Shown: in pieces, positions 25,370-58,206 of the stretch
How the letters are laid out: every line of letters starts with the position of its first letter
Position numbering within the stretch: position 1 is the stretch's first letter
Source of the DNA: Hypanus sabinus
Lineage: Eukaryota
Direction: 5' to 3'
Assembly: GCF_030144855.1 (NCBI RefSeq)
Contig: NC_082712.1
Coordinates: 137,020,001-137,084,000 of the forward strand
DNA: 64,000 nucleotides
Notes under the pieces: generated by a model
Seen by the model: the letters and a program-made list of their open reading frames with translations, nothing else
Told to the model about the DNA's origin: nothing
The model's database searches: none
Program-made: the position numbers and the translations under genes

Positions 25370-27120
25370 TAGAACCATACCATAGAACACTACAGCACAG
25401 TACAGGCCCTTCAGCCCTCCATGTTGTGCCGACCCATATAATCCTTTAAAAAAGTACTAAACCCACACTATCCCATAACCCTCCATTTTTCTTTCATCCA
25501 TGTGCCTGTCCAAGTGCTGTTAAATACCCCAAATGTTTTAGCCTCCACCACCATCCCTGGCAAGTCATTCCAGGCACTCACAAATCTCTGTGTAAAAAAC
25601 TTACCCCTGATGTCTCCCTTAAACTTCCCTCCCTTAATTTTGTACCTATGCCCTCTGATGTTTGCTGTTGGTGCCCTGGGAAACAGGTACTGACTATCCA
25701 CCCTTATCTATGCCTCTCATAATCTTGTGCACCTCTATCAAGTCCCCTCTCATTCTTCTACGCTCCAAAGAGAAAATTCCCAGCTCTGCTAACCTTGCTT
25801 CATAGGACTTATTCTCTAATCCAGGCAACATCCTGGTAAATCTCCTCTGCACCCTCTCCATAGCTTCCACATCCTTCCTATAATGAGGTGACCAGAATTG
25901 AACACAATACTCTTTAAGTGCAGTCTCACCAGAGACTTGTAGAGTTGCAACATGACCTCTCTGCTCTTGAACTCAATCTCCGTTAATGAAGCTAGCAACC
26001 CATAGGCCTTCTTACCTACCCTATCAACCTGTGCAGCAACCTTGAGGGATGTATGGATTTGAACCCCAAGGTCCTTTTGTTCATCCACACTCTTAAGTAA
26101 CTGACCATTAATCCTGTAGTCAGTCTTCTGGTTTGTCCTTCCAAAATGCATCACCTCACACTTGTCCGGATTGAACTCCATCTGTCATTTTTCTGCCCGA
26201 CTCTGCAGCCTGTCTATATCCTCTTGTAACATTCGATCACCTACAGCTCCATCCACAACTCCTCCAATCTTCGTGTCATCCGCAATCTTACTTACCCATC
26301 CTTCCGCCTCTACATCCAGGTCATTAATAAAAATCACAAACAGCAGGTGTCCCAAGACAGATCCCTGCGGCACTCCACTAGTCACCAACCTCCAGGCAGA
26401 ATACTTTCCTTCCACAACTACCCTCTGCTTTCTTCCTTTAAGCCAATTTTTTTTTATCCTAATAGCCAAGGTTCCACTTATCCCATGCCTTATGACTTTC
26501 TGGATGGGTATCTCATGAGGGACCTTGTCAAAGGCTTTGCTAAAGTCCATGTAGACTACATCCACTGCCCTACTCTCATCAATTTCTTTTGTTACCTCTT
26601 CAAAAAACTCAATCAGGCTCATGAGGTACGATCTTCCTTTCACAAAGCCATGTTGACTATCCATGAGTAGACTGTACTTCTCCAAATGCTCGTAGATCCT
26701 ATCCTTAAGAATCCTTTCCAGTAGTTTGCAGACCACCGATGTAAGACTCACTGGTCTATAGTTCCCAGGTTTCTCCCTATTACCTTTTTTAAACAAGGGA
26801 ACTACATTTGCCATTTTCCAGTCGTCCGGCACTTCCCCTGCAGCTAAAGAGGATTCAAAGATCATAGCTAATGCTCCTGTGAGCTCCTCTCTCAATTCCC
26901 ACAAGAACCTGGGGTGTATCATCTCCGGCCCTGGGGATTTACCAATCTTTATGTTTTTAAGATGATCCAGCACTACTTCTTCCTTAATCTCCATGTTGTC
27001 CAGCACACAGGCCTGCTCTATTTCGACCTCATCCTGATCAAGATCCTTTTCACTTGTGAATACTGAAGCAAAGTATTCATTTAGGACCTCCCAAACCTCC
27101 TCCACCTCCAGGCACGTTGC
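25370..27120 (-). mobile_element. 5'-truncated CR1 (HER1-like) LINE with RT remnant
   Basis: ORF 26185-27105 has NYRPVSLTS, YMDFSKAFDKV, GVPQGSVLG and ADDTKIGG; ORFs 25816-26181 and 25468-25701 continue it; ttctatg-type 3' tail near 25375. Confidence 0.92.
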
Positions 27121-29677
27121 CCTTTTTATCCCTTAGCAGTCCACCTTTGTTCTTGTGCTGGCAGCTCATTCCACACTCCTACCACCCTCTCTGTGAAGAA
27201 GTTCCCCCTCATTAAACATTTAATCTTTCACACTTAACACATAACCTCTAGTTGTAGTCTCACCTGATCTCAGTGGAAAAGGCATGCTTGCATTTACCTT
27301 ATTTCTACCTCTCATAATTTTCTATACCTCTATCAAATCCCCCCTCAATCTTCTACATTCTAGGGAATAAAGTTCCAGCTATTCAACCTTTCTGTATAAC
27401 TCAGGTCATCAAGTCCCAAAACATTCTTGTAAATTTTCTCTACACTCTTTCAATCTTATTTACATCTCTTCTGTAGGCAGGTACACAATACTCCAAACTG
27501 CACACAATATTCCAAATCTGGTGTCTTATACAATTTCAACATAACTTCTCATGTCATTCTACCATACATGGATACCTATGAATACAACCAAAGGAAACAG
27601 CGTTCCTCCGGGGCCAAGGTGCAGAACACAGTAGCAACGGTCATATACAGCACTGGAGGCAGCACACTATCACCGGCTGCAACAGGCAACACCTGCTAAT
27701 ATCAAACACCAATTTGTTCTCAAATGCTAGATGTAATTGTTAGGAGGCATTACATTCATATACACAAACTATCACCATTGTTTACTTGGTTTTCTAGAAT
27801 TCAAATACGTTTAATGAAAATATATTTTAATACAATAAAAAAGACAAGTACATTCATGATGTTTTTGCCCCACAAGAAATTCATCCAAGATCTTCTCTAC
27901 CAATTCTCCTGGTGCATATCCGAATCCAATTTAAAACCAGTTGTTAACTAGCATACAATTTTCAATGAATGGTGTATTTGTTCCTTTTCTCACCACAATT
28001 TCCAATTACCAGATGGACTACCAAATAAATCCCAGTACATCATATTTATCAGCAGTTTCCTTCATCTCTCTGTAAAAATTAAGATAACTTTAAGACTTGC
28101 ATACAAGCATAGATTATTCAGTTATATTGGGGACACCGCTTTAGTTGATTCCATTCTAAGCTTAGGCTAACACATGAAAGTTTAGACATTTCACATACAT
28201 ACTTGTACAAAAAGGCTCAATACTTCCCAAACTGACGTAACATATACATGTAAATCTTAAAAATGTTAATATACAAAATTTATATGTCATCTTCAAATGT
28301 GTTCACATGCAGATGGTCTAATAATTAATGACTGATGTCTAAAATTCTTTTGAAAATTAAAACACCTCTCAGTAAACAGTACACATAATTCTTTGATGCA
28401 ATCAAGCTTTCTGGTGTCAATGCTGGATTGCAGAAATCCCCTTTCTGGTTTACAATAGTTAACATTTAAAGACAGAAAAGGGGTTCCACATACAACTGGG
28501 ATTGTTACACCCTTGGTAATAAATGGTCTGTGACTGCAATTCTAGTCCACTTTACTGAATTCCAACAACCTTAACATTAGTTCTAAAATGTTAAAACCTT
28601 GCAATAATGAAGGGCCAGAGATGCAAGCAGGCCAGGCAGCATCTATGGAAAAGAGTAAACAGTCAATGTTTCTGGCTGAGACCTTTCATCAAGAGTAGGG
28701 GAAAAAAGGAGATCAGAGTAAGATGGCTGGGGGAGGGGAGGAAAAAGTACAAAGTGGTAGGTGATAGGTGAAACGGAGTGAGGGAGGGGTGAAGTAAAGA
28801 GCTGGGGAGTTGGTTGGATAAAGAGATAAAAGGTCTGGGGAAGGGGAAATCAGATAGGAGAGAATAGAAGACCATAGAAGAAAGGGAAGGGGGAGGAGTA
28901 CCAGAGGAAGGGGATGGATGGGTAAGGGGATAAGGTGAGAGGGGAAAACGGGAATGGGGAATTTCTAAAGGGGCGGGCAATTACCAGAAGTTTGAAAATC
29001 ATTTTTCAAAATCAATTTGCCCATGATATTCCTTTGAAACCTTCCAATCCAGGTACTCATCCAAATACTAAAATGTTTTTATAATACCAGTATGAGGCTG
29101 TCCCTCAGGTCCCTTTTGTACTCTTACCCTCTCACCTTAAACCTGTGCTCTGTAGTTTCTGATTCCTCTGTGTGCATTGCCCGTTTATTCCCCTCAACAG
29201 ATGCTGCCCAACTTGCTGAGTTCCTCTAGCATTTTGTTGTGTTTCTAGAAAATTTACAAAATTGATCCACCTGATTAGCTGGGGGCAAAGGAAGGAGAGA
29301 GTCAATGTTCGTAAATGCACCAATAGTAGGTACATTTTTGTCCAAATGGCACAGGAGTTCAACTGAACTGTAATAAATGATTCAGTGGATTTGTCCAGCA
29401 GATTGACATAATTAAATCATTGTGGCTTAATGCATCAGATCAGACAACTCCTATTGTACACAAGATCTTGGGACACATCTGCCATCCTCAATTAATTTCT
29501 CCTTACATCTTCAACTAAATCACTGTCTGCCTCACAATTGTGCAACTTCTGTGACTTAAATAAATGGTATGTTAACTAAACTGGATTAATTTACCAATCA
29601 GAATGGTGAATGGGTACTGGATGGTAAACTGCAAAAGAACAATGAAGTTGACATAAATTATTTTATTCTCAGTTATA

Positions 29678-30653: not shown

Positions 30654-30958
30654 TCAACTAAATATCAAGTCATACTGTTTCATATGTTCTTCCAAATTAA
30701 ATTCAAGTTGCAGTTGGATGTGATGCTTATCATTTGCTTTTGGTGTATAAGTTAGTTCAGTGGTGAAACCGCTAGCATTTTCAAGTGGCTTGCTTGTAAC
30801 AAACTCCTTTTCATCAAACGGATAAGCATCTCTGTACCAGATGATATGAGCCTCTTCGAGGGCACATTCTTTAACAGTGCAAGAAAGAGTTACTGGTTGA
30901 CCAATTTTAGGATTTTCTGTGAGGCACTTTATTTCTGAAACCTTCTGCAATACTTCCG
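30654..30958 (-). CDS. Last coding exon: C1-like domain D7 ending QYDLIFS*
   Basis: ttcttttttcag|CG phase 1. VSEIKC..PKIGQPVTLSC..IIWYRD..GFTTELTYTPKAND; paralogous to D6. Confidence 0.78.
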
Positions 30959-33900
30959 CTGAAAAAAGAATTTACAATAAATAACATGAGAACCTTAAAG
31001 GCATTTCAAAAATAAAGACCTACGTGAGTCAGTATCTATTACTGCACTCGCAAAGTCCTTATTTTAATTCTTACAAAGTCTAATGTTTATAGTAAATTAC
31101 CAATTTCCACCTGAACTACTGTTGAAATTCATCAACATTGACCAAGATGCTAAAAGTTAGACAGATCTGCCCACATTGAATGTATATCCCTGAACACTAC
31201 CTGTTCAAATGTCTTCTAGATGTTGTTATTTTACCTGCTCCAATACTTCCTCTGTCAGCTTACTTGATATACTATGTATCATTCTCTGCCTCAGGTCCCT
31301 TGAAAATGTTTCTCCTCTCACACTTACACTCTCTAATTTTCAATTCCCTTTGATGGGAATACAATTTGTGCATTCATCCTAACTACGTCCCATATGATAT
31401 TATACACCTCTAAGATCACCTCTCAGTCACAGATACTCCAACAAATAAAGCGCTAGTCTGCTCAGCCTCTCCCTATAACTCACCTCACATTTGACACAAC
31501 TTCCATGATCTGTTTTTGCTGGTGTAAATTTTATGCTTGTAATTGATGAAACCAGAACTGCTTCTGCAATCACACAATGACCTGTTTTTGTGTCTTTCCA
31601 TCTTTATACCACATTACTTTGATTTTCGCAGGAACATAGCCTTTCAAGATGCTAAATGTTGCAGGCTATTTAGCTTGAAGTAGTTCCAGATCACTTTTAA
31701 TATCAGATATCTCCTCTCAACTTAAACCAATGCTCTCTAGTTTTTCCTTTCCCTTTGATGGGAAAAATATTTGTGCATTCATCCTGACTATGCTCCATAT
31801 TATACTATACAGCTGTAAGATCACCTCTCAGTCTCCGATACTCCAACAAATAAAGTCCCAGCTGCTTAGCCTCTCCCTATAGCTCACCTCCCTGAGTCCT
31901 GGCAACATTCTCATAAATCTGCTTTGCACTCTTTCCAGCCAATGATATCTTTTCTATAGAAAATATCATATCCACTCTTAACACACTCATCTGGAATATG
32001 CTTCTCCTTTCTCGGTATTCTCAACACAGTGGATCACATGCCAGTTCACCCATCTTGCCTTGTCAGCATTTCATGATCTGAACCACAATCATTCCCTCCA
32101 TCACATTCGCTAGAGAAGAGACGTACAGCAATAAAGGAGTTTATTTGTTAACACAGATGTCACAAATACGTATCAGGTGAAAGTGTGGGATGCATGCTCG
32201 GCAAGATTCTTTAAAACAGAGTCAGTATTCATTGCCTTGTGGAAGAGAAGGGAAGTGATCTTGTTTTAAAATGGAGGCCTAAAGTGATTACAAGCACGTT
32301 CAGGTATGGAAGTTAGCAACAGAGTCTACCATAAAAATCCAGTCCACCTTAGAGTATTTGAAGAGTTGACGACATGATAGAGCCTAAAGGAAAAAGTAGT
32401 TCGCCATAAGGTGCTCAAGTGTCTGTTTGGAGATGACTACTTTGTTGGTATTTACATATATAATAAGAAGAAACAGTTGGTAGACAAATGACGTGAGAAA
32501 TTCAATTTTGTAAAGCTTAATCAGATCTGTGTTTGGCTGTTTCAGTGTATTCTTGTTATCATCTACAGATCAGTGGAAATTTATTGGATATGGGCACCCG
32601 AGAAATGAAGGCAGCAATCAGACAGGTCCATTGAAATGGACTGGCAGCTTGTAGACAGCTTAAGTTCACCAAGAAATGAAGGCAACATACTGACGGGGCA
32701 CTGAAATGGTCTAGCAGCCTGTATAGAATGGCTCAAATTCACCATTCCAAATACTAATTCTTGTCTCATATGTAATAATCTAAAATTCTACTTTGCCCCA
32801 ATAATGGATTTCAAATGAATGAACACTTTACCTTCACTTGTTGCTCTATTGCTGTCATCTTCATTGACAGCATTGTCTGCAGGGAAAAAATGGAAGTTTA
32901 ATAAAATCAAACATTAGTCAAATCAAATTAGTCCTTAGAAATTTAAAACACTAATTATCTAGATACTACTAAAACTCTCATGCTCTGTTTGTTTGTTTGT
33001 GACCGCCAGTTAGCGCAAACAGTGCACTACAGCGGCACATTTTTTTGGCTAAATCAACTTAAAATGCGTTAATTTACAGAATGCAGGTAAAGTTCAGCGT
33101 TATATATTGGTATAAAATTGCTCATTTGCCAAAAATCAACAGCCCCGCTTTCACCCGAGAGTCGATCCACCATCATGAAAATTGGGAGGCGACACCAGGA
33201 TGCAATGCGCATGGCCAGCCTCAGCAGCGACACCAAGCGGAGCAAAAGGGCAGGGCAGCTCTACTTCAATTCTCTCAAATAGTGCCCCAATGGGTCACCC
33301 CATTGTCTAGTTTCATCTAACCAGATGTCAAAACAACTGTAGCTACCGAGAAATATCTATTCACAGCAGTAGAAAAAACACACCAGTTCAGTCAATGTGA
33401 GGACTTGATTTGCAGTAAATGGTTAAATTAAGTTTAAATAAATCATTGCATCTATAACAACATTATTGGAATGTGTCACATGAACACACTAGAATAGTGC
33501 ACTGTTCCCTGTTACAATTGATGGTGAAGTCGTTGCTGGGGCGAGGACCTACAAGTAGTTGGGGCTGCAACTGGATGAAAGACTTGAGTGGAGCTCAAAC
33601 ACACAGGCTGTGTCAAAGAAGGGCCGGAGTCACTTCTACTTCTTGAGGAGACTGAGGTCCTTTGGATTGTGCAGGTTTCTCCTTCACTTCTTCTACCAGT
33701 CTGTTGTCGCCAGTACAATCTTCTCTGTAGTGGTCTGCTAGGGCAGTGGCATCAACACGGGCAATGCCAGCAGGCTCAATAAACTGTTTAGAAAGGCTGG
33801 CTCTTTCATAGGTGTTCAACTGGACACACTACAGGCTGTCATAGAACAAAGGACACTACAGGAAATACTGGACAATGATTCGCGCCCTCTGTATGCCACA

Positions 33901-36900
33901 AGGGCTGAACAGAGGAGAAATTTGGGTAATAGACCAAATCTACCATGCTACTCCAAGAGTGCTATATAAAGTCATTCTACCTTCGGCCATTAGGCTCTAT
34001 AATTAGACAGCTGACAGCCGGTTAAGTGATGAACCCCTATTGTTAGATAGTTTGAGGTAAACTTTTCCCTTCTACTATTTATATCTGTGCACTTTTAATT
34101 CTAATCTGACACTGTAATTTCCTTTGGGATCAATAAAGTATCTATATCTATCTATTCCAAGATCTTCCTTGGAGGCCTAATTAGAATTCATTCTTTTGAA
34201 CTTTGTCTCTTCGTGAACCACCTCACATTTGATACAATATAAAAGATCTGTTTTTGCTAGTGTAAACTTTATGCTTGTAATTGATGAAATCAGGCCATCT
34301 TCTGCAATCTCACGATGACCTGTTTTTGCGTCTTTCCATCTTTATACCATGTTTCATTGATTTTCAAAGGAACATAGCTATTCAAGATGCTAAACATTGC
34401 AGGCTTTTTAGCTTGAAGTAGTTCCGGATCACTTTTAATATCAGATATCTCCTCTCAACTTAAACCAAAGCTCTCTAATTTTGCCATTCCCTTTGATGGG
34501 AAAAAGATTCATGCATTCATCCTGACTATGGCCATATGATATTATACCCCTCTAAGATCACCTCTCAGTCTCCAATACTTCAACAAGTCCTAGCCTGCTC
34601 AGCCTCTCCCTATAACTCACCCCCTTGAGTCCTGGCAACATTCTCATAAATCTGCTTTGCACTCTTTCCAGCCAATGATAACTTTTCCATGAGAGTAAAC
34701 AAAGCTGTGTGCAATATTCCATGTGCTGCATTACCAACATCTTGTACAACTGAAATGCAATGCCCTGGCCACCTACATTCAATGCCCTGATGAAGGCCAA
34801 ATGTGCTTTCTTTTCCAACTGACTACTGGTAATGCCACGTTCTCATAGAGATATTAAAAATATATTTCTAAACACCCTCATCTGGACTATCCCTCTCCTT
34901 TCTAGGCACTCTTTGAACAGTGGATCACAGTTTACCCATCTTGCCTTGTCAGCATTGCAGGATCTGAACCACACTCAAATCCTCCATCCCATTCCATAGA
35001 GAAGAGAGATACAGTGATAAGGGAGTTTACTTGTCAATGCAGAAGTTACAAATACGTGTCAGATTAAAGTGTGGGATGCATGCTCGGTAAGATTCTTGAC
35101 AACAGAGTCAGTATTCATTGCCTTGTGGAAGAAAAGGGAAGTGATCTTGTATGAAAATGGAGGCCTAAAGCGATTAGAAGCATCTTCAGGTATGGAAGTT
35201 CACACCAGAGTCTACCATAAAAATCCAGTCCACCTTAGAATACTTGAGGAGTGGACGACATGACAGACACTCAAGGGAAAAGTAGTTCGCCATAAGGTGC
35301 TCAAGTCTGTCTGGAGATGACAACTTTGTTGATATTTACTTATATAATCAAGAGAAACAGGAGGTATACAAATGACATGAGAAATTTAATTTTGTAAAAC
35401 TTAAGCTGATCAGTATTTGGCACTTTCAATGTATTCTTGTTAACATCTAAACATCAGTGGAAATTTATTCGATATGGGCACCCAAGAAATGAAGCCAGCA
35501 ATCAGACAGAGCACTGAAATGGTCTAGCAGCCTGTATAGAATGGCACAAGTTCACCATTCCAAATACTAATGCTTGTCTCATGTGTAATAATCTAAAACT
35601 CTATTTTGCTCCAATAATGGATTTCAAGTACACTTTACCTTCACTTTTTGCTCGAATGCTGCTGTCTTTCTTGTCAACATTGTCTGTCAGGGGAAAAAAA
35701 GCAGTTTAATAAAACCCAACACTAGACAAATCAAATCAGCTCTTAGAAGTTTAAAACACTAATTATCTCATCTAACCAGATCTTAAACATGTGTATCCAC
35801 CTGGATTCATCTATTCCCAGCATTAGTCAAAAATCCACACCAGTTCAGTCAATGGGAGGACTTGCTATGAATTAAATGGTTAAACTACTATTGTGTTAAG
35901 TTTAAAATAAATCATCATTGTATCTATAACAACTTTATTGAAATGAGCCACATGAACATACGAGTACTCTGCACTGCTCACTGTTACAATTGATGGTGAG
36001 GACGTGGCTATGAAGAGGAGAGAAGTGTGGGATGCTTGCTGAAAAAGATTATTGACACCAGAGTCAGGATTCACTGCTTCTTGGAAGAAAAGGGAAGTGA
36101 TCTTGTTTTAACATGAATGCCTGAAGGGTATAAGGCATGTTCAGGCATGGAAGGTGCACGAGAATATACCATGAAAATCCAGTCCATGATAGAATACTTG
36201 AAGAGTGGATCACTCGACACGGCCAAGGGAAAAGCACATGATCCTTCTACAGCTGCTCATGGTTTACAGTAAGGTGCTGAAGTGTCTCTTTGGAGAGGAC
36301 TACCTCTTTGATCTTTACTCATCTGATCAGAGAAACATTGGTGTTCAAATGACAGAGAAAAAATTAATTTGTAAAGCTTAATTAGATCTGTATTTGGCTC
36401 TGAGTATACTTCTGTCATCATCTCACAAACTGTGGAAATTTATTGGATATGGGCACCCAAGAAATGAAGGCAGCAGACTGACAGAGCGTTGAAATGGACA
36501 GGCAGCTTGTATACAACAGATTAAATTCACCATTCCAAATACTAATGTTTGTCTCATATGCAATAATATAAAATTCTACTTTGCCCCATTAATGAATTTC
36601 AAGTTAACGAACACTTTACCTTCACCGATCACTCCATTGCTAACAACTTGCTTGTCAAGCTTGTCTGTCCAGAAAAAAAAAGTAGCTTAATAAAACCCGA
36701 CATTAGTCAAATCAAATTATCTCTTTAAATTTAAAACATTAATCATTTCATCTAACCAGATATTAAACTGTAACCACCGAGAATTATCTATCCACAACAT
36801 CAGGAAAAAAAAAGTTTCAAAGTGAGGCTTGATATGAAGTGAATGGTTAAGTTAATAATTTGTTAAGTTTGAAATAAATGATCATTGCATCTATAACAAC

Positions 36901-39900
36901 TTCACTGAAATGTGTCACATGAGCAAATGAGTACTCTGCACTACAATTGCTGGTGAGGACGTGGCTGTGCCGAGGAACTACAGGTACCCAGGAATGCACC
37001 TGGATGACAGAGTTGAGTGGAGCACCAACACAGAGGCTGGGTCGAAGAGGGACCAGAGTTGCCTCTACGTCTTGAGAAGACTAAACTCCTTTGGAGTATG
37101 CAGTCCTCCTTTTCACCTGTTCTAATAGCCTGTTGTCACCAGTACAATCTTCTACACTGTGGTGTGCTGGGGCAATGGCATCAACCCCAGTGATGTCAAC
37201 AGGCTCCATTAATTTCGTACAAAGGCTGGCTCTGTTAAATGAGTCTAACTGGATGCTGTGGGGGACCAATGGACCCTACAGAAAATACTGGCAATTCTGG
37301 ACAATAATCTCACCCTCTGCATACCATCTTGGCTGAACCAAGGAGAACTTTTAGTAACAGACTAAGGCAACTGTGCTGCTTCAAAGAGCGCAATATCAGG
37401 TCATTCCTACTCTCTACAACTAGGCTCTATAATGAGTCAGCCATTATAGGGTTGTGAGGATCCCCTCTTGTTACACTGCTTGAGATAACTTAATTTTTAG
37501 GCTTTAGACCTCTTCTAATTATTTATATCTGTGCACTTGTAATGCTGTGGTGACACTGTACATTCCTTTGGGATCAATAAAGTAACTATATCTAACTACT
37601 GCAACGGGCTCTCTCTCTCGAAGGTGTAATTAGAATTTATTCTTTTGAACTTTCTTTACAACACCTCAAATTCACTATTCCAAACACTAATGCTTGTCTC
37701 ATATACAATAAATTTCAACTTTGACCCAATTATCGATTTCAAGTAAAACATGTCCAGTACCATAATTACTTATTTGCATGCTAACTGGCCCCAACATTTT
37801 ACACAATACTTCCAACTCTTTATGATATTTAAACTCCTCCAGTCAAAGTATTGCTCGAATCATTTGACCAACTGCGCCACTTAAAAATTACACATTTTAC
37901 ACCGAGAATGTGTCATCAAATCTGATCACACAGCTGTTAAACATCAGCTATACTTTTCCAACATCCCCCCTCGTTTAACTGCTGCTCTGCAGCAGAAAGC
38001 ATCAGCTAAGAGAAATCCATAGCACAATGATTGAGAGATTTTCTCAGTGACATTGGGCGTATTTGTACTTCACTGCTTTGTTATTAACCATACGTTCCAG
38101 CAAGGAACCCTCCAAGGCAATCATGTACTACTGGAGTACAAAGAAATTTTAACTGCATCAAATTGTCACCCTCTACCTCGTTAAGATATATTTCACCATC
38201 GTACATAATCACATTCCCTTTTCTGGTTTCTGACTCACTGATGTGTATTATTTTATTCGCTTTAAACAATAAATAACAAACAAAACTTGGTAGTTTATTA
38301 TCCTTAGAATAGCTTCAGGTTTACTTCCACTTAAAAATTCAAAGCTGTTGTCACTGGGCAAAAAAACAGCACAGCGCAAGATTTCTGCGCACAATGGTCA
38401 TTACAAATTCGAGGGAACATTGTGTTCTAGTCCTTTTATTTCTGAAAATCTGTAACATTACCAGCCTCTGTTACTCCCCAGCAATGGGCTACACACAAGC
38501 TCTGCAACATTGCACTCGTTAGTGACCTCACTTGATCCAGCACTTTTCAGTGCCGGACATCAGAGGCCGATTCTGCACACTGTCTCCATGGCTTCCTCTG
38601 CACCCCATCTGTGCACTGAGGGCATCATAGTGTATTCTCATTGATATGCCCGTTCTAGGCACTCAGTATATGTAACTGTGGCCAAGATGCTATGCTCTGT
38701 TGGATAGCAGCAAATGATGTACTGGTGGTCTTATCAGAATAAGGAGAGTCAATCTCATTGAAATGTACAAAACTCTTATCTGTCTGGACAGGGATTAATG
38801 TGCAATTGATGTTTCAACTGGTTGATATAGCGAGGACAAGATATCAGTGTCTTACAGTTTGGATATGAGAAAAAGATATTGTCAGTCAGAGCTGTGAGGA
38901 AGCTATGAACCCACAACCTTCAAGGCAAAAATTGAAAGATGTTGGAAAATAAAGTCTGTGGGGCCAAAACAGGGATATGACACTGCAATAAAAAAAACAA
39001 AGCCTGGCATGATCTCACTAAATAGAAAAGCAGCCATGAGAGGACAAATGGCTTAGACTGCTTCTCAGGGTACAATGTGATCACAGACTTGGTTAGAATG
39101 GTATTCACCTCTTAACTGCAGACGGTAACTCGATGTCACAGGCTTGCTTGAAGTTTCAGAGTGAAGGAATTGCATTTTGAACTCTTTCCCATGATCTTCA
39201 GTCGTTGGTGTAAATGTCCACTGGGATGATCGTGAGTACAAACCACTGGAATCCTCTTTATTTGCTTCGGTGACTATTCCTACTTTTGATGGATTTTGAA
39301 TTTTACTGAAATCTTTGAACCAGAATATCTGATTTCCTTCTGGATAAAATTCATAAGCCATGCAGGAAAGTGTTAAAGGCTTTCCTATTTCAGGGGAAGG
39401 TGGATCTGCCTTAATTTCCGAGATCTTTGGCAATGAAACTAGACATAAAAAAGGAAGAAAAATAAGTTAAACTAAACATGCAACTTAAAGGAGATTACAA
39501 TTTAAACCAAAACTGTCAAGCATTTCTTAGTAAGTAGTTAAAGACTGAATACTATTAAAAGCAATGAAAGAAAAGATTGCCATTTCTTTCCTGATTTGGA
39601 TTACTATTTTATTCCGAATTATTGGAACTCATTGCTTTCTTGTGGGTTCTCAGCTGTTGTTGATTGGTCATTATTCTGTTGTTAAGCAATTAGCTTTCAT
39701 CATCAGGGCAGCCACTTTACATTGTTTATACATTTCAATTAGTAGTTAGAAACAGTGGTTATTTGAATCTGCCTTTTGTTGGAATGCTAACATTTTAATT
39801 AAAAAATAGAATCATTCAGGAGAGTCCTTTAAACTATCCTATATCCTTGTAATTGTGTGAAATACTGTCAAACACCCTTGATAAGTTTAGACATATGACA

Positions 39901-42900
39901 GCTAGTTTTGATCAAATAGTTTATAGTTTATATAATAGTAATTTAAAGTTTTATACTTTTTCTTCAACTATATCTATGTATTAACTTTTATGTCTTTACC
40001 TACAAATCAATGAATTCACCCATTTTAATCTAGTTTGATTTTCAAAGGTATTCTCTGTTCAATCAAATCCACCATGTTCACCTTTCCTTTGCAATAATAC
40101 AATTAACCTGTAGGCCTTACAACAGTTGGCTTTCTGTCTTAGTAAACGGATGCCAAAAAGTTACAAGGGTATGTCCCAGTACCAACAGTTATCATTAGAT
40201 GTCCATCCTTTATGAATTTCAAATTGATTGTATAAAAAACAAGTTCAGAAACGAAAAGTAATCTCATGCTTTAGTTAAAAACCTGTTACTTACTCACTTC
40301 ACCAGCTACCCAGTGAGTCTCTATTGGCTTTGATAAGCTCTCATGTATGACTTGGCATGTGTATTTTGTCTTAGTGTCAGCAAAGGTAAGAGCAATCTTC
40401 ATATTAGCTGTCAAATGATAGACTTCATCCTGTCCAATTACTGCATCATTAACTTCAGAATTTTGTTGAAGTTCTACGCCATCTTTCAGCCATTTAACTG
40501 TGATATCTCTGGGGAAAAATGAACTTATTTGACAGCTTAAGTTCACGGGCTCTTCTGCAATTGGTTTTGCTGCGTCACACTTTATAGTGCCCAGTTTTGG
40601 AGGAGCTGGAAGAGAAAACAAGGTTTTAAACAGTAGCAGATTTTCAAAAGTGGGGAATTAGATATTGCACTTTCCATATGTAATTACTTATAGCTTCGAA
40701 AACTTTAGAAAAAAGACAAAATATAATTATTTAATTTATTAATTTCATTGCAATCCTACTCTATTGATTTAGTTTGCTATATTCTTAAATTATCTCAAAG
40801 CTTTTCCCTTGTAACATTATTACTACCTTGTAACAATAAGAGAAATATGGTATCAAGACAATGCACTCATCAGAGGAGCCTCCAAATCAAATAAGCAATC
40901 TGGATCCTTTCTCATTTCAAGGCTTAGATAACAGTATACCTGTAATGCTTAGGGTTATTGCTTTCTCTTGCTTGTCGTTAGTGGAGTGGTGCAGTATGCT
41001 ACAGAAGTACTGCGAGCTCTGGTCTTGCTGTTTATCTGGCACAATAACTAATACACTAGTAACGCTGTAAGTTTTGTCTTCATGCTCCACTTCACTGATG
41101 TAATTCTTTGCCTTCAAATTCATCTTGTTGTCAATGATTGTTGTGTTGTCCAGCTGCAACCGGACAAGTTCTTCCAAATCTGCATTCTTTCTCTTTTGTT
41201 GCCATATAATACTTAATGGCCTTGGTTTAAATCCACTGATTGAACAAGACAAAGCCGCAGGTTCCTTGTCCTTGATGAGAGGAGGCATCAAAATGTTTAA
41301 AACCTTAGGTGGCACTTAGAAAAGAGAAAATGAAGAATAAATCACACAAATTGAAATGCAAAGAGAGAAAAAATATTGAATTGTTTTAAATGTTTAATGA
41401 CTGAGTCCACCTGATGAAGAGCTGTATTTAACATAACTATCCACATCATTGACATAAGAGATTCTACTGGTGCTGGTAATCTTGAGCAAAACATGCAAAA
41501 TACTGGAGAAGCTCAGCAGGTCAGGCAACATCTATGGAGGGCAATAAACAGCTGATGTTTTGGGCCGTGACCCTTCAGTACTCTTCACCATATTTGCTGC
41601 CTGGCCTGCGGAGTTCCTCCTGAATTTTGTGTATCTACATCAATGCCAAATACCATATATGTTAATGAAAGTCATTCAAAATGGAGACAAAAAGACAGCA
41701 ATTAATAATTAAAGAAAATGTTTGAAATTTACCTCCTTTAACATCTAGTGTCAGTGTCCTAGTTATAGGCTCTTTCAGTGCTCGATGTTGAACTTCGATA
41801 CTTAACTCAGCCCCATCATCCTGCGAAATATCTGGATATATTCTGACATTGACTTCTACACTGGAAATCTTAAGTGTGTCAGTTGTGAAATCAGAAATCT
41901 GTGGCTTAAAGGATGCATCTTCAACATCTGGCTGCAAAAGGATCTTCATTTCATTACGATCTGGTCCATTTGTTGATGCAAGCTGACTGTAGTTTTCATT
42001 CCAATCCTTATCACTCCACTTCAGAAGCTGATGTTTATCCTCCTGCCTCCTCTTTACGTAGATCACAACTGTAACATCACGAGGCCGAAATGAGTTAACC
42101 ATCCAAGTGACTACTTTTTCTTCATGATGTTTCAAAACTTGATGTTCACTGCATCCAGTAATTTTTGGAGGAACTAGTCAAAACAAAATAAGTAATTAAC
42201 ACTTAATAATGTAAATGTTCTTTCTTTCATCCAGTCTTTCTGGCCCTTCTGGAATTACAGAAATAAGACAATTAGTGTAACAGACAAGGTCAGAATTTCC
42301 ATTAGTTTGTACCATTTTTATTCAGCATATTACCGTCCAAAATAGTGAAACCAATGAAAATTGTAACCAGTGATATTAAGAGCATCTTTAAAAATTGCAC
42401 TATTTACTTATTCCAAAACACTGGGCAGCTATTTATTTATTTAATTTCTTATATCCAAGGAAGTATGAATCTTTATGTAGCTGATCCACAATATACAAGC
42501 AGTAAAGAGGGGCAATGTGGGAGGATACTGCCCTTACCTTAAAATTGCATACATGATTGTACAATCAGATCAATGAGATCAATGTACAGTCAGATAGCAA
42601 TCAGATCAATATGTACTGATAAATCTAACTTCTGATTTCAGATTTCTGTTAATTGCATCTATTGGTGAACTTTAGAGCAGGTTCTTAAAATAATCTACAC
42701 AGTAAAAACCTAGAAAATTCATCACTTAGCACAGTTTATTTCTAAACATGTGAACCTATTTTTTTCTCTAACCCCCTCCCCCAAAATCCCTCTGCCGATA
42801 AAGGATTTCCCAAACTAGAGAAAATCTGCAGACACTGGAAATTCAAGCAATACACACACAAAATCCTGGAAAACTCAGCAGGCCATGCAGCATCCATGGT

Positions 42901-45900
42901 AAAAGGTAAACAAGCGATGTTGTGAGCCGAGACCCTTCATTAATCCTGAAGAAGGGTTTCGGGCCCAGACGTTGACTGTTTACTTTTCTATAGATGCTGC
43001 CTAGCCTGCTGAGTTCCTCCAGTGTTTTGTGTGTGTTGCTTAATGCTCATTCAATGTCAAGGGCAATTAAGCAAAGGAAGTGACAAAAACCAGATAAGAA
43101 CCCATGAAATGGGCCACATTTGGTGGGGCCCCACATTGTGCTATTAAAACAGTGCCCTGGAGAAAACCTGGAGGAAATTCAACTAGTTTTCTACAGGATG
43201 AAGCTTATTGGTGAAATTAATCTACATTATCCAAAAGGAACTTTGAAAATTGAATAATGTAATTTATTACATCATAAAAATGAACTGTGCATCAATTCCC
43301 AATTCAAATGTGTTAGAAGGGAAATATAATTATAATAAAAAAATTCAAAATAATATGGAGGCTGTGTCTGGAGTATCAAATTCCATTCAATGTAGAAACT
43401 CCAAGCAAGGTTTTCTGTTGAACACCAATGGGGGAGTACAACTACTGCAGCCCAGTTGTAAGCAAAGCAAAAAAAAATCAATCACTTCCCAGTTTGGGGA
43501 AGAGATACAAGAAGCAGTCAAAGGATCAGAACAGCATCGCAAATTCACAGCCACCAACCCAGGTTCAATGCCAACCTCTGGCACTACTTGTGTGGAGTTT
43601 CCACACTGCCCGTGATGCAGGAATTTACTCCAGGTGCTTTGGTTTCCTTCCGCATCACCAAAAAAAAAACATTTGCAGGCCAATAGGTTAATGAAAACTC
43701 TGAATTTCCCCAAGTGTAGGTGAATGGTAGAACCTGGGGGGGGGGAGCTGGTGAGAAATTGGGGGAAATAACATGGGATTCTGAAAACGAGTGCTTGATA
43801 GCTGGCACGGACACACGGAGCCAAATGGCCAGCTTCTTTGCTGCATCTTCTATGACTCAATGCACAAACTGCAACACACCAAAAGGATTTCACTGTCTTC
43901 ATATTACCTTTTAGAAAGATCCAGAAATAAGCAAGAAGTCCTGCAGCAATTAGTAACCCAAATACTCCTAGAAGTGCAGAAATAACCACTGCTGCTGTTG
44001 AAGTTGATTCAGGCTCTGAAACTTAGAAAACCAAAATGACAATATGAGCATTTAGACACACGAATAAACTTCACCAACTTGAGACATATGAGTTTTTGCA
44101 AATTATAAATCACCATTCATAAGCCCTGTAAAAGTTTTTCAAGAAATTAAAACCATAATTGTGCAACATATTTTCACATTAAGTCATGGTGTGGGAACTC
44201 CATTCTGTAGTTTTGTTATTTTTCATATAATCTGGAATAAGTGATGGGCTCAGAGATTCTAGTATCCCAACTTTTGACTCAACTTATTTGCACATGATAT
44301 CAGTTGTAAGTTATGCTGTCAAATATTCAAAAAGAAAGATAAAAAACTAGCCCTGGGCAAGGGTGGTGACAGAAGGCTAGAACAATGCTTCCAAATTTGC
44401 CTCAATTATTTTTGGGACATATTAAAAGAATATCTAACCCACAGGATGAAGACAGAGGCAGAAGGGCAGGGCCCTTCTTACTCAACCAAATCGAGTACAG
44501 GAAAGGTAGACAGCGGTGTGCAGAAAATGAAATGATACGATGAAGGTAGAAATTAATCATTCATGGCATGGAAAGAATCAGCAGTTGCATTGGCACAAAT
44601 AGTAAAATGAGTTAATGAGCAAGTAACTAACAGCCAGTCACCAAGAGTCTCTGTGCAAATCCAAAATGTGCCAGCCTCTGTTTATTTTCAGGCATGACTC
44701 AAATTCTCAGCCAATATCTTTCTGGGGTGAAATAACAAACAATGAACTTTGATTTAAATCAGTGGAATGAAAGTCAAACATTTAAAAAAAAACGTCAATA
44801 CAAATATTGCTATGAAGTATCCCCAACTTAGTCAAAGTATGGAACATACCCTCAACTGTGAGTTTCACCACCTGTGAAAGTTTGTCTGGAAGGGACTGAT
44901 GTCTCACTGTACACTTGTATATATTACCATCATCTTTCGGAGTTGGTTCAATTATTATATTACTAGAAACATTAAACGTTCCATCATTATTAGAAACTGC
45001 AGCTCCAGTGCAGACACGTCTTTCCATTCTCTCAGCTATTCCTCTGGATATCTTTTCCCAGAAGATTTCATCAATCTGAGGATAAAATTCCGTAGCATCA
45101 CACCAGACAGATTTCTCTGTACCATTCCGAATGGTAATGTGTTGTGTGGACAGAAGCACCTTTGGCTGAGCTGTATTAAAAAGCAAATCAAACCTTAAGT
45201 TAGATCGGATGAAGTGTATTATCATAAATATCTAAAACCAAGTCTAAGCTATTGCTATGTTAAGATAAACAAAATGTACCACTTTCCTTCCTTCAATTAC
45301 TCCAAAACACAGGATTTCCCTTCACTAATACTCCTGAAAGATAATTCACTTGCTCAACATTCAATGTAGTTCCATGTGAGAGTTTTTAATTAGTTATTCC
45401 TTCTGATCCAGAGTCTCCAAATAATAAATTAACAGACCGTGGATAAGTGCATTGGTAATTCTGCTGAGATTGTATGCATTATGGATAATGTAGACAATTG
45501 CCAAAGGATATGGCAGGATATAGATCAGTTATAGATATGGGCAGAGAAATGGCAGATAGAGTTTAATGTAGCTAAGAAATAATGTTACAATTTGGGAACT
45601 CAAATATGAAGGGGTAATACTTTTAATGGAAAAATCTTTAACAAAATTGATCTATAGAGAGATTTTGTGACCCAAGGCCACAGTCCCTGAAAACAGCACA
45701 CGTTGATAGGCTGGTAGGGAAGTACATGGCACACTTGTCTTTATTAGTTGAGGCACTGAGATCAAGAGTTGATAAGTTACTTTGCAGCTTTATAAAACAC
45801 TGCTTATGCTATGCCTAGAGCACTGCTTCCAGTCCTGGTTGTCCACACAATAGGAATAGAGTAGAGGGTTTGAAGAGGGTACAGAAGTGGGATGTTGCCC

Positions 45901-46804
45901 CAGGAAAAGAGCATGTGCTACAAGGAGAGGACGGACAAATGTGGAGCAACAAACGAAGAGCTTTGTCAGGCAGCATCTTTCGGACAGTTAACGTTTCAGA
46001 TTAAAACCATTCAAATGAACTAGGGTTGTTTTCCCTGGAGTGTCAAGGTGAGGGAAAAACTGATGGAAATTTATATGATTATGAGAGGCAAAGATAGAAT
46101 GGACAGCCAGTATCTTATCCAGGGTCAAAATGCCAAAGGTGAGGGGGGGCAAGTTTAAAGATGATGTGAGTGGCAGGTTTTCTTTTTATTAAAAAAACAC
46201 ATAGAGCAGTGGGCGCCTGCAATGCACTGCCAGAGGTGGTAGCAGAGGCCGATGTAACAGATGCATTTACAAAGCTCTTAGATAGGCACATGAATGTGTA
46301 GAGAGTTGAGTGATAAGGACATTGTGTAGGCAGAAGAGATTACTTAACTTACTAGCTAATTACTAGTTTAATTAGTTCTGCACAGCATCATGGGCTGAAT
46401 GGCTTGTTCCTGTGCTGTGCTGTTCTCTGTTCACACCAGGTAATGTTTTAGAAGTCTCTTACCCAAAATCACAACTCGTGAGCTCTTTTCCACTTTGTCA
46501 GGAGTGACAAGTACAACACAGGTGTATTCTCCTGCTTCACTTAATTGGATATTTGGAAGATAAAGTGAAGCATCTCCTTTCTTTAATTCAGTTTCAGATA
46601 TTTTGGCTCCAGATCGTTTAACGGTAATATTTCTTGCATTAAAGGTGTAGATTTCTTTCTTTTGGGATCCATACAACCACTGAACACCTACGTTTGATAG
46701 GTCAAGAATGGGCGATCCAAAATCAGTAACTTTACATTCCAAGGTAATGTCCGTATACAAAAGTACATTCTTTGGACTTCTAAAAATGGTCATATCCAAT
46801 GTTT
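30654..46804 (-). CDS. NCR3LG1: NCR3LG1/B7-H6-like multi-Ig gene: V - C1 - TM - 4 x C1-like - micro-exons - C1-like; about 900 aa; leader exon not located
   Basis: Twelve exons with canonical AG/GT boundaries, all phase 1, joining into one open frame. V and C1 exons carry B7-H6-type motifs recalled from the human protein. The symbol means -like; orthology is not tested. Confidence 0.75.
31481..31710 (-). pseudogene. Decayed Ig C1-like pseudo-exon (paralogue of 34180-34448)
   Basis: ISDIKSD..*..GYVPAKIKVMWYKDGK..*, then a frameshift, then ITSIKFTPAKTDHGSCVKCEV; truncated by a CR1 duplication. Confidence 0.68.
32832..32876 (-). CDS. 45-nt micro-exon copy C (DNAVNEDDSNRATSE)
   Basis: ttttttccctgcag| ... 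GAAG|gtaaag, phase 1-1, no stop. Confidence 0.65.
33505..34155 (+). mobile_element. Rex1/Babar-like LINE 3' fragment (copy also at about 36945-37590)
   Basis: YK.LG..LD.RLEWS.NT.AV.KKG.S..YFLRRLRSF..C; tail gggatcaataaagtatctat. Confidence 0.72.
34180..34448 (-). pseudogene. Decayed Ig C1-like pseudo-exon
   Basis: ISDIKSDPELLQAKKPAMFS..YVP..TWYKDGK, then a frameshift, then AEDGLISSITSIKFT..KCEVVHEET. The 5' splice region is replaced by CR1 sequence. Confidence 0.7.
35639..35683 (-). CDS. 45-nt micro-exon copy B (DNVDKKDSSIRAKSE)
   Basis: tttttttcccctgacag| ... GAAG|gtaaag, phase 1-1, no stop. Confidence 0.65.
36620..36664 (-). CDS. 45-nt micro-exon copy A ((N/D)KLDKQVVSNGVIGE)
   Basis: ttttttttttctggacag| ... 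GAAG|gtaaag, phase 1-1, no stop. Confidence 0.65.
38239..38259 (-). CDS. Candidate 21-nt micro-exon (ANKIIHI)
   Basis: T-rich acceptor tttgttatttattgtttaaag, donor gtgagt, phase 1-1. Confidence 0.45.
39109..39438 (-). CDS. Exon: C1-like domain D6 (F-strand Cys replaced by Met)
   Basis: 330 nt, tctag|TT...AGA G|gtgaat. LSCMAYEFYP..FWFKD..DSSGLYSRSS..DHGKEFKMQFLH. Confidence 0.85.
40294..40605 (-). CDS. Exon: C1 domain D5
   Basis: 312 nt, tccag|CT...GTG A|gtaagt. LSCQISSFFPRDITVKWLKDG..YTCQVIHESL. Confidence 0.87.
40940..41314 (-). CDS. Exon: C1-like domain D4
   Basis: 375 nt, ctaag|TG...ACA G|gtatac. LSCSISGFKP..IIW..DKTYSVTS..YFCSILH. Confidence 0.85.
41733..42173 (-). CDS. Exon: atypical C1-like domain D3 (no canonical Cys, long insertion)
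   Basis: 441 nt, actag|TT...GGA G|gtaaat. VPPKI..VTWMVNSFRPRDVTV..DDGAELSIEVQHRALKEPITRTLTL. Confidence 0.8.
42810..43040. repeat. Palindromic element built from two opposed Penelope-type termini
   Basis: cacacacaaaatcctggaaaactcagcagg...gacccttcatta is mirrored by cctgaagaagggtttc...cctgctgagttcctccagtgttttgtgtgtg. Confidence 0.75.
43530..43862 (+). mobile_element. HE1/V-SINE-like SINE, ending about 45 bp from the TM exon donor
   Basis: B-box-like ggttcaatgcc, tgtgtggagttt...ccaggtgctttggtttcctt core, CR1-type tail. Confidence 0.6.
43908..44015 (-). CDS. Exon: transmembrane segment (EPESTSTAAVVISALLGVFGLLIAAGLLAYFWIFLK)
   Basis: 108 nt, tttcag|AG...AAA G|gtaata, phase 1-1, about 26 contiguous hydrophobic residues, no stop. 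Confidence 0.85.
44850..45170 (-). CDS. NCR3LG1: Exon: Ig C1-set domain, B7-H6-like
   Basis: 321 nt, acag|CT...GAG G|gtatgt. CDATEFYP..W..NNDGTFNVSS..YKCTVRHQSL. Confidence 0.9.
45420..46420 (+). mobile_element. Degraded CR1 3' fragment between the V and C1 exons
   Basis: gatatagatcagtta...tgggcagagaaatggcagatagagtttaat; tail atgggctgaatggcttgttcctgtgctgtgctgttct. Confidence 0.65.
46463..46804 (-). CDS. NCR3LG1: Exon: Ig V-set domain, B7-H6-like
   Basis: 342 nt, tttag|AA...TTG G|gtaaga. ITLEC..VGVQW..GDASLYLPNIQLSEAGEYTCVVLVTP closely parallels B7-H6 [26 protein letters not shown]. Confidence 0.9.
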
Positions 46805-57200: not shown

Positions 57201-58206
57201 TGTGTTGAAGTCCCTGCACGATGATTCTGGACATTTGGGGTTGGAGAAGACCTATGGATTGCTCAAAGACAGGTTTTACCCGAATGAAGGCGGAGGTGGA
57301 GCAGTATTGCAAGTCATGCATTCGCTGCATACGGCAGAAGACACTGCCTGTTCAGGCTGCTCCATTGTCACACTTGCAAAGTGAGGGGCCTTTGGGCCTG
57401 GTGTGTATAGATTTCTTGGCAATAGAGCCTGATGCCAGCAATACGGCAAATGTCTTAGTCATCACAGACCACGTATGCTCAAATGTTCACACACGTATGC
57501 TCAAGTGGTGCACTAAGGTGGCAAAAGTGCTATGGGAGAAGTATTTTGTGCATTATGGTCTTCCCCGGTGGATACATGGTGACCAGGAATGAGACTTTGA
57601 GAGTAAGCTCATCTATGAGCTACTGGGTATGTTGGGGGTTGAGAAATCAAGGACTACGCCCTATCATCCGCAGGGCGATCTCCAGCCGGAGAGGTTCAAA
57701 TCGGATGCTGCCCGACATGCTCGGAACTCTGGAGATTAACAAAGAGAGCCAATGGAGTCAACATATTGGGCATCTGGTTCACTGTTACAACTCTACCCGA
57801 AATGAAGCTACTGGGTACTCGCCCTATTATTTGATGTTTGGGCACGAGGCAAGGTTGCCCATTGACCTCGGTTTTGGGACGAATGCGGGAGAAGTATTGC
57901 CAAAGCCATACTTGAAATATATGTCTGATATGAAGAAAGAATTACAAAGAGCGTATGAGCTGGCTGGGGAGGCGGCCGCTAAGCAGAATCGGGGAAATAA
58001 GAAGAGGTATGACCAGAAGGTGAAGTTCTCCCAACTCCTGCCAGGAGATTGAGTCCTCATAAGGAATTTGGGACTACCTGGGAAACACAAGCTGTCTGAT
58101 TGCTGGGCGAAGCATGCCCTATGTAATAGAGAGTCAGATGCCAAATCTACCAGTTTTCTGGGTGAAGCCTCAGAATGGGAGAGGGTCTTTCAAGATTCTC
58201 CATTGG

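What the first reader, a model, noticed from the sequence alone, without database searches (positions are those of the whole stretch)
30654..46804. B7-H6-like receptor whose transmembrane exon sits in the middle, implying five cytoplasmic Ig-fold domains
Seen: after the B7-H6-like V (46463-46804) and C1 (44850-45170) exons comes a clear TM exon (43908-44015) with no stop. It is followed in frame, phase 1 throughout, by five further intact C1-like exons (D3-D7), and I found no second TM. Established: B7-family and NCR3LG1 proteins are V-C-TM with a non-Ig tail, and C1-set domains are normally extracellular or luminal. Inference: this is a type I protein with an NKp30-ligand-like ectodomain and an Ig-repeat cytoplasmic scaffold of about 640 aa. 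That would be an unusual immune-receptor architecture, and I know of no functional description of it.
Basis: partly seen in the sequence, partly recalled or inferred. Interest (0 to 1): 0.92.

Follow-up and report, generated by a model that had tools for sequence, protein, structure and literature searches.

The report
Stingray B7H6 gene with Ig-domain tail
This is a real, already annotated stingray gene of the B7H6 (NK-cell ligand) family; five antibody-type domains follow its membrane anchor, a layout shared by most non-mammalian jawed vertebrates and probably lying inside the cell, though nobody has tested that.

Summary
Eleven minus-strand exons, all AG/GT and all phase 1, reproduce RefSeq XP_059831706.1 (Hypanus sabinus LOC132397245, "uncharacterized protein") exactly from residue 67 to the end.

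The V-C1 part is most similar to human B7-H6 (E 1e-33). The TM-to-D3 junction is not a mis-join:
- It occurs in a nurse shark GenBank protein named B7H6, an elephant shark UniProt entry and an intron-free RNA-assembly contig.
- It occurs in most of the 150 best database representatives, from chimaera, sharks, rays, sturgeon, bichirs, coelacanth and lungfish to amphibians and reptiles. NCBI names several of these NCR3LG1.

Three statistics on 114 family members favour a cytosolic tail:
- Charged residues follow the positive-inside rule.
- N-glycosylation sequons are enriched before the TM and at chance after it.
- The canonical Cys pair is intact in 95% of pre-TM domains but 46% of post-TM domains (100% in control ectodomain arrays).

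Isoforms that skip the TM exon are annotated in three species, so a secreted form probably also exists. Sidedness is untested. This scan had already flagged paralogues on other DNA of this genome.

The parts
46463..46804 (-). IgV exon (phase 1-1) of the B7H6-like ectodomain
   Evidence: Pfam V-set E 5.6e-8. AG/GT sites. V-C1 best solved relative is human NCR3LG1/B7-H6, E 1e-33.
44850..45170 (-). IgC1 exon of the ectodomain, canonical Cys pair intact
   Evidence: Pfam C1-set E 4.2e-8. 100% match to P0171.
43908..44021 (-). Transmembrane exon, 114 nt, symmetric phase 1-1.
   Evidence: Hydropathy 2.66 over 19 aa, the strongest such stretch inside the gene. Exact match to RefSeq residues 287-324. 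The orthologous exon is skipped in Hemitrygon akajei isoform X6.
41733..42173 (-). D3: first post-TM Ig-fold domain, 146 aa, both canonical Cys lost, about 25-aa disordered insert
   Evidence: No Pfam hit. AlphaFold2 pLDDT 83, beta-sandwich. Foldseek matches beta-2-microglobulin, TCR constant domains and UrIg2. hhalign to the C1-like profile gives 99.7% (partly circular).
40940..41314 (-). D4: C1-set domain, Cys pair kept
   Evidence: Pfam C1-set E 9.7e-8. Cys columns at least 90% conserved in 44 orthologues. Ka/Ks 0.18 against H. akajei.
40294..40605 (-). D5: C1-set domain, Cys pair kept
   Evidence: Pfam C1-set E 1.8e-15. Second Cys invariant in alignment A3.
39109..39438 (-). D6: C1-set domain, second Cys replaced by Met, an ancient substitution
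   Evidence: Pfam C1-set E 1.2e-7. The consensus DHGxEFxMExLH is shared across 44 orthologues.
36620..36664 (-). Micro-exon 1 (45 nt, phase 1-1), acidic and Ser-rich linker
   Evidence: Exact match to RefSeq X1 residues 811-825. AG/GT sites. Predicted disordered.
35639..35683 (-). Micro-exon 2 (45 nt)
32832..32876 (-). Micro-exon 3 (45 nt)
30654..30958 (-). D7: last Ig-fold domain, second Cys lost, ends in TGA directly after the domain
   Evidence: Weak Pfam Ig hits. Confident beta-sandwich in the AlphaFold2 model. Collinear with the last domain of nurse shark B7H6.
34180..34454 (-). Relic exon (frame-shifted), not in the mRNA model
   Evidence: 44% identical to post-TM domain 6 of nurse shark B7H6. 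Read in two frames.
31430..31665 (-). Second relic copy of the same exon, with the same frameshift
   Evidence: Lies in a roughly 2.8-kb tandem segmental duplication.

Best explanation
The stretch is the body of Hypanus sabinus LOC132397245. It is a member of the B7H6/NCR3LG1 family in that family's ancestral, non-mammalian form.

Shown: the gene has a signal-peptide exon outside the window, then IgV, IgC1, one hydrophobic TM exon, and five Ig-fold domains with a disordered acidic linker encoded by three micro-exons.

Inferred: the main product is a type I membrane protein. Its V-C1 ectodomain is displayed as a ligand for NKp30-family (NCR3) receptors. Its roughly 630-aa tail lies in the cytosol as a chain of five Ig-fold domains that no longer need disulfides or glycans. 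The most likely role of that tail is to pair or scaffold the ligand, as C1 domains usually pair with other C1 domains.

Inferred from annotated isoforms of relatives: skipping the symmetric 114-nt TM exon would yield a secreted seven-Ig form.
For: Gene model. The eleven exons reproduce RefSeq X1 residues 67-956 exactly, and X2 maps at 100%.

Family. V-C1 matches human B7-H6 structures at E 1e-33, against 1e-17 for CD276.

Transcript-level TM-to-D3 junctions:
- Nurse shark QTT61906.1, named B7H6: V-C1-TM-7 Ig.
- Elephant shark V9K7L7, which differs from the genome-derived models at several residues.
- Logan contig L002 from run SRR22028074, with an uninterrupted 970-codon ORF.

Conservation. 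Most of the 150 best representatives have C1-TM-Ig x3-14, and 114 sequences pass a strict filter. Named taxa run from chimaera to alligator. Domains are collinear one-to-one with shark, sturgeon, coelacanth and newt, at identities like those of V and C1.

Topology statistics on 114 members:
- K+R is 3.18 in the 15 aa after the TM and 1.46 before; D+E is 0.54 after and 2.41 before.
- Sequons are 1.62x the shuffle expectation before the TM and 1.06x after, paired Wilcoxon p 5e-16. Control ectodomain C1 arrays give 1.39x.
- The Cys pair is intact in 95% of pre-TM domains, 46% of post-TM domains and 100% of control domains.

Fold. The tail model has mean pLDDT 83.9 with five beta-sandwiches.

TM skipping. 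It is annotated in Hemitrygon akajei X6, Heterodontus francisci X3 and Bombina bombina NCR3LG1 X2.
Against: - No experiment or RNA-seq count was available for this gene. The RefSeq models are predictions whose read support I could not inspect.
- D4 and D5 keep both cysteines in at least 90% of 44 orthologues. That could mean disulfides still matter, as they would in a luminal or secreted form. From memory, some cytosolic Ig domains such as telokin also keep both cysteines in reduced form.
- Ka/Ks against H. akajei is only moderately below 1 (post-TM 0.57, pre-TM 0.63) and rests on few changes.
- No known cytosolic signalling motif or partner was found, so the scaffold role is a guess.
- I could not read Flajnik 2012, Ohta 2015 or Kinlein 2021, so the layout may already be discussed in print.
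Confidence: 0.72

Rival explanations
1. The working product is mainly the TM-skipped, secreted V-C1-D3-D7 protein, or the array otherwise acts in the lumen or outside the cell. On this reading the TM-containing mRNA is a minor or regulatory isoform, and the Ig array is an extracellular stalk or soluble decoy.
For: The TM exon is symmetric (114 nt, phase 1-1). Exact TM-exon skipping is annotated in a ray, a shark and a frog. The D4 and D5 Cys pairs are nearly invariant. All post-TM domains are of C1 type, a type otherwise known outside the cytosol.
Against: Both RefSeq isoforms of this gene, six of seven in H. akajei, and the nurse shark, elephant shark and Logan transcripts all keep the TM. 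Sequons are at chance after the TM, and 54% of post-TM domains have lost one or both canonical Cys, whereas control ectodomain arrays keep 100%. 38% of post-TM domains carry a lone canonical Cys, which from general knowledge would be awkward in the ER. The basic stop-transfer flank is conserved.
Confidence: 0.17
2. The tail is a decaying remnant. The domains after the TM are translated but no longer have a function, and the lost cysteines and relic exons are signs of erosion.
For: Three of the five domains lack a Cys pair. Two frame-shifted relic exons lie in the D6-D7 intron. The stingray has five domains where the nurse shark has seven. Ka/Ks is 0.57.
Against: The frame stays open over 630 codons in both stingray species. 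Domains are collinear over hundreds of millions of years, with domain-specific motifs such as DHGxEFxMExLH. The Cys losses are ancient and fixed, not recent. All five domains give confident fold predictions. The tail evolves no faster than the ectodomain.
Confidence: 0.07
3. This is a gene-model artefact: two neighbouring genes, a V-C1-TM ligand and a separate multi-Ig gene, wrongly joined because all Ig exons share phase 1.
For: Phase 1 is shared by all exons here and, from general knowledge, by most Ig-superfamily exons, so phase compatibility alone proves nothing.
Against: There is no leader-like exon or other start between the TM exon and D3. The same join is seen in mRNA-derived sequences and in more than 100 representatives from many classes.
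Confidence: 0.03

Closest known systems
Nurse shark B7H6 (GenBank QTT61906.1, 'natural killer cell cytotoxicity receptor 3 ligand (B7H6)', 1092 aa) and the NCBI-named NCR3LG1 of gecko, alligator and Bombina
   Same: Signal peptide, IgV, IgC1, a single TM, then collinear C1-like domains. D3, D4, D5, D6 and the last domain correspond one-to-one at 32-53% identity to the nurse shark protein. Both share the Cys-to-Met change in D6.
   Different: The stingray gene has five post-TM domains rather than seven. Homologues of nurse shark post-TM domain 6 survive only as frame-shifted relics, and domain 5 is absent. It also has three 45-nt micro-exons in the last linker.
Human B7-H6 / NCR3LG1 (PDB 3PV6, 4ZSO, 6YJP)
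   Same: The V-C1 ectodomain is the best sequence match among solved structures, E 1e-33. Both are type I with a single TM.
   Different: From memory, the human tail is short, non-Ig, gag-like and carries ITIM/SH2/SH3-type motifs. Here the tail is about 630 aa of Ig-fold domains.
UrIg2 and other receptors with multi-C1 ectodomains (PDB 9DMX; PMC12227049)
   Same: Arrays of C1-set domains after a V domain. UrIg2 is among the best sequence and structure matches of the tail.
   Different: In those proteins the array lies before a C-terminal TM, and every domain keeps its Cys pair (102 of 102 control domains). Here the array lies after the TM, and more than half of the domains across the family have lost the pair.
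Cytosolic Ig-domain proteins of muscle (titin, obscurin, MyBP-C, telokin)
   Same: Chains of Ig-fold domains that work without disulfides in the cytosol. This is an analogy for how the tail could work.
   Different: Those are I-set domains in proteins with no signal peptide or TM. Here the domains are C1-set by Pfam and are tethered to the membrane.
Butyrophilins (V-C-TM-B30.2)
   Same: A B7-related V-C ectodomain joined to a large folded cytosolic domain.
   Different: The folded tail is B30.2/SPRY in butyrophilins. The Pfam scan of these exons found no such hit.

Membership tests
B7H6 / NCR3LG1 (B7 family) | IgV followed by IgC1 in the ectodomain | tested here: met
   Pfam V-set E 5.6e-8 and C1-set E 4.2e-8.
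B7H6 / NCR3LG1 (B7 family) | Closer in sequence to B7-H6 than to other B7 or C1-bearing proteins | tested here: met
   PDB search: NCR3LG1 chains at E 1e-33; next are CD276 at 1e-17 and TAPBPR at 1e-13.
B7H6 / NCR3LG1 (B7 family) | Single-pass type I membrane protein (signal peptide plus one TM) | tested here: met
   One TM. RefSeq X1 has a hydrophobic leader, PLVLFLIVVWLTAAA, encoded outside the window. No dedicated signal-peptide or TM predictor was available.
B7H6 / NCR3LG1 (B7 family) | Full-length collinearity with proteins named B7H6 or NCR3LG1 by their depositors | tested here: met
   44% identity over 791 aa to nurse shark B7H6, with domain-by-domain collinearity. Proteins named NCR3LG1 in gecko, alligator and Bombina share the layout. 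Synteny was not examined.
B7H6 / NCR3LG1 (B7 family) | Binds NKp30 (NCR3) | not testable with these tools
   Needs a binding assay with stingray NCR3-family ectodomains.
B7H6 / NCR3LG1 (B7 family) | Mammalian-type short gag-like signalling tail | tested here: not met
   The tail consists of five Ig-fold domains. This feature defines only the mammalian form.
Multi-C1 ectodomain receptors (UrIg2-like) | C1 array placed before a C-terminal TM, with all Cys pairs intact | tested here: not met
   The array follows the only TM. Three of the five domains lack a pair.
Cytosolic I-set Ig proteins (titin-like) | I-set domains with no signal peptide or TM | tested here: not met
   C1-set is the best Pfam family for D4-D6. 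A leader and a TM are present.
Butyrophilin / BTNL | B30.2 (PRY-SPRY) domain after the TM | tested here: not met
   No SPRY or PRY hit in any exon at E up to 1.

The most novel reading that the evidence does not exclude
The post-TM array is a functional cytosolic chain of C1-set Ig domains, a domain type otherwise known only outside the cytosol. It would be the ancestral tail of the NK-cell ligand B7H6, kept from chimaeras to crocodilians and replaced in mammals. Skipping one symmetric TM exon would move the same domains from the cytosol to the secretory pathway. If the array pairs with itself or binds cytosolic partners, it could couple the state of the cell to display of an NKp30 ligand.
Probability: 0.55. 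Interest if true: 0.8.

Novelty: new member of a known kind. Interest (0 to 1): 0.6.

Why it matters
Mammalian B7-H6 is a stress-induced self ligand that lets NK cells kill tumour cells through NKp30. Its tail looks like a late acquisition. The data here show that across non-mammalian jawed vertebrates the same ligand carries a long chain of Ig-fold domains behind its membrane anchor. The sequence evidence points to that chain lying in the cytosol.

If an experiment confirms this, it would be the first case I know of C1-set Ig domains working inside the cell. It would also open the question of what the ancestral NK ligand sensed or bound on the inside. The gene itself is ordinary in the sense that it is annotated, belongs to a local multigene cluster, and has many relatives with the same layout.

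Tried and rejected
- **Second TM.** A hydropathy scan of the whole minus strand found none in or downstream of the gene.
- **Other Ig exons or a second gene in the window.** An HMM of the six C1-like domains run over all six-frame open stretches found only these exons and two relics.
- **Family members with two TMs.** They looked like a variant layout, but their TM sequences are the Ig heavy-chain membrane type (TFIVLFLLSLFYSATVTLFKVK). They are therefore Ig loci or fused models, not this family.
- **The long open frame reading through the TM-exon donor** (43390-44022, 211 codons). It is not kept in Hemitrygon akajei, where it stops after about 63 codons, so I treat it as chance.
- **Leader exon.** It is not in the window. 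In H. akajei it lies about 29.5 kb upstream of V.
- **Literature.** Six full-text searches found no description of Ig domains behind the TM of B7H6. Flajnik 2012, Ohta and Flajnik 2015 and Kinlein 2021 are not held.
- **Large ORFs in the flanks.** They are LINE endonuclease and reverse transcriptase or have no Pfam hit.
- **Tandem repeats.** None at score 200 or above.
Full report
**1. What is in the sequence**

They are followed by five more open Ig-like exons. All have AG acceptors and GT donors and all are phase 1.

Pfam calls V-set for the first exon and C1-set for C1, D4, D5 (E 1.8e-15) and D6. D7 gets only weak Ig hits and D3 gets none.

An HMM built from the six C1-like domains was searched over every open stretch of the window on both strands. 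It finds only these exons plus two frame-shifted relics at 34180-34454 and 31430-31665. No second hydrophobic segment lies in or downstream of the gene.

**2. It is an annotated gene**

- RefSeq XP_059831707.1 (Hypanus sabinus LOC132397245 isoform X2, "uncharacterized protein", P0171) maps to the window exons at 100%.
- The eleven exons joined in phase reproduce X1 residues 67-956 exactly.
- The leader exon is outside the window. In the Hemitrygon akajei orthologue it lies about 29.5 kb upstream of V.

**3. Family**

The V-C1 part matches the three solved human B7-H6/NCR3LG1 chains at E 1e-33. CD276 follows at 1e-17 and TAPBPR at 1e-13. The tail matches SIRP-alpha C1 domains, Ig heavy-chain constant domains and shark UrIg2.

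**4. The layout is not an accident of this locus**

A profile of the six domains was searched against 1.84 billion representative proteins. It gave 2254 hits at E up to 1e-3, and most of the best 150 have C1-TM-Ig x3-14. 114 sequences pass a strict filter.

Named members come from:
- rays, skates and sawfish;
- many sharks and the chimaera Callorhinchus;
- sturgeon, bichir and reedfish;
- coelacanth and lungfish;
- newts, frogs and caecilians;
- gecko, skink and alligators.

These taxa are listed. NCBI names the gecko, alligator and Bombina proteins NCR3LG1, and a nurse shark GenBank entry (QTT61906.1, 1092 aa) is named B7H6.

The nurse shark protein is SP-V-C1-TM followed by seven Ig domains. 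The stingray D3, D4, D5, D6 and D7 find their best match at collinear positions in shark, skate, sturgeon, coelacanth and newt, at identities similar to those of V and C1. The two relic exons are decayed copies of nurse shark post-TM domain 6.

**5. Is the TM exon really joined to D3 in RNA?**

I had no reads for this species. Three sequences of relatives that do not come from genome models carry the junction:
- the nurse shark entry;
- elephant shark UniProt V9K7L7, which differs from the genome-derived models at several residues;
- a 7.5-kb Logan contig from run SRR22028074, in which the whole 969-aa protein, TM included, is one uninterrupted ORF. It is therefore a spliced transcript. Its nearest relatives are caecilian proteins.

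On the other side, RefSeq lists isoforms that skip exactly the TM exon in three species: Hemitrygon akajei X6, Heterodontus francisci X3 and Bombina bombina NCR3LG1 X2. The exon is symmetric, so skipping keeps the frame and would give a secreted protein.

**6. Which side of the membrane?**

This cannot be settled without an experiment, but three statistics on the 114 members agree.

- *Charge.* The 15 residues after the TM hold 3.18 K+R and 0.54 D+E on average. The 15 before hold 1.46 K+R and 2.41 D+E. This is the positive-inside pattern of a stop-transfer anchor.
- *Sequons.* N-x-S/T occurs at 1.62 times the shuffle expectation before the TM and 1.06 times after it. It is higher before the TM in 93 of 114 proteins (Wilcoxon p 5e-16). 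Twelve control proteins, with a C1 array before a C-terminal TM, give 1.39 times. The best-conserved sequon column reaches 22 of 44 sequences in the ectodomain and 14 of 44 in the far longer tail.
- *Cysteines.* The canonical pair is intact in 95% of 134 pre-TM C1 domains, 100% of 102 control domains and 46% of 601 post-TM domains. The replacements are V, I, M, F, L and W.

The losses are specific to each domain and old. D3 has mostly lost both cysteines, and D6 has Met for the second Cys across the orthologue set. D4 and D5 keep both in at least 90% of 44 orthologues.

That last point is the main evidence for the rival view that the array also works in an oxidising compartment. From memory, cytosolic Ig domains such as telokin also keep both cysteines unbonded, so it is not decisive.

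**7. Are the domains real and under constraint?**

- AlphaFold2 with family alignments gives D3 a beta-sandwich (pLDDT 83) with a disordered insert. Foldseek matches it to beta-2-microglobulin, TCR constant domains and UrIg2.
- The whole 636-aa tail model has mean pLDDT 83.9 and five sandwiches. The only disordered parts are the D3 insert and the micro-exon linker.
- Against the H. akajei orthologue, Ka/Ks is 0.63 before the TM and 0.57 after it, with D4 at 0.18. Both are weakly constrained, which I would expect of an immune ligand, and the tail is no freer than the ectodomain.

**8. Reading**

The most likely account is a type I NKp30-family ligand whose cytosolic part is a chain of five Ig-fold domains, with a soluble isoform made by TM-exon skipping. 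The role of the tail is unknown. I propose pairing or scaffolding because C1 domains usually act in pairs, but nothing here tests that.

**9. Novelty**

The gene is annotated, the layout is in GenBank under the name B7H6, and this scan had already flagged several paralogues in the same genome. One follow-up reached the same identification and left sidedness open. What I add is the topology statistics, the TM-skipped isoforms, the transcript-level junctions, the exact exon model and the relic exons.

I found no paper describing the tail, but the three most relevant papers were not available.

Noticed in passing
window 31300-37250: A tandem segmental duplication of about 2.8 kb, with a partial third copy, lies inside the D6-D7 intron. 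It carries the three 45-nt micro-exons and the two relic Ig exons, and the copies are 61-94% identical. The H. akajei orthologue has four such micro-exons in its longest isoform, so linker length varies between species through this duplication.
   Followed up: partly
window 34180-34454 and 31430-31665 (minus strand): Two decayed copies of an Ig exon homologous to post-TM domain 6 of nurse shark B7H6. Both carry the same one-base frameshift in an A-run, so the shift predates the duplication.
   Followed up: yes
window 44015-44024 (minus strand): Two AG acceptors 6 nt apart lie at the TM exon (AAG|TTTCAG|AGCC). RefSeq uses the upstream one, which adds Val-Ser. Use of the downstream one would be an in-frame micro-variant.
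   Followed up: no
window 43390-44022 (minus strand): The frame stays open for 211 codons through the TM-exon donor into the intron. The same read-through in Hemitrygon akajei stops after about 63 codons, so this is probably chance.
   Followed up: yes
window 25471-27132 (minus) and 59982-62116 (plus): LINE-type retrotransposon ORFs with reverse transcriptase (Pfam RVT_1 E 1e-22 and 9e-39) and an endonuclease domain. One lies downstream of the gene and the other in its first intron.
   Followed up: partly
window 54000-58000: A GC-rich stretch (0.49-0.53, against about 0.38 around it) with strong positive GC skew lies in intron 1. The ORFs there have no Pfam hit.
   Followed up: no
P0165-P0168 (Heterodontus francisci paralogue, not in the window): The tail of this shark paralogue alternates Ig domains with repeated acidic modules of about 26 aa (KEIEDDSDRSLLENVPDSER). 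They resemble the stingray micro-exon linker but are much expanded.
   Followed up: no
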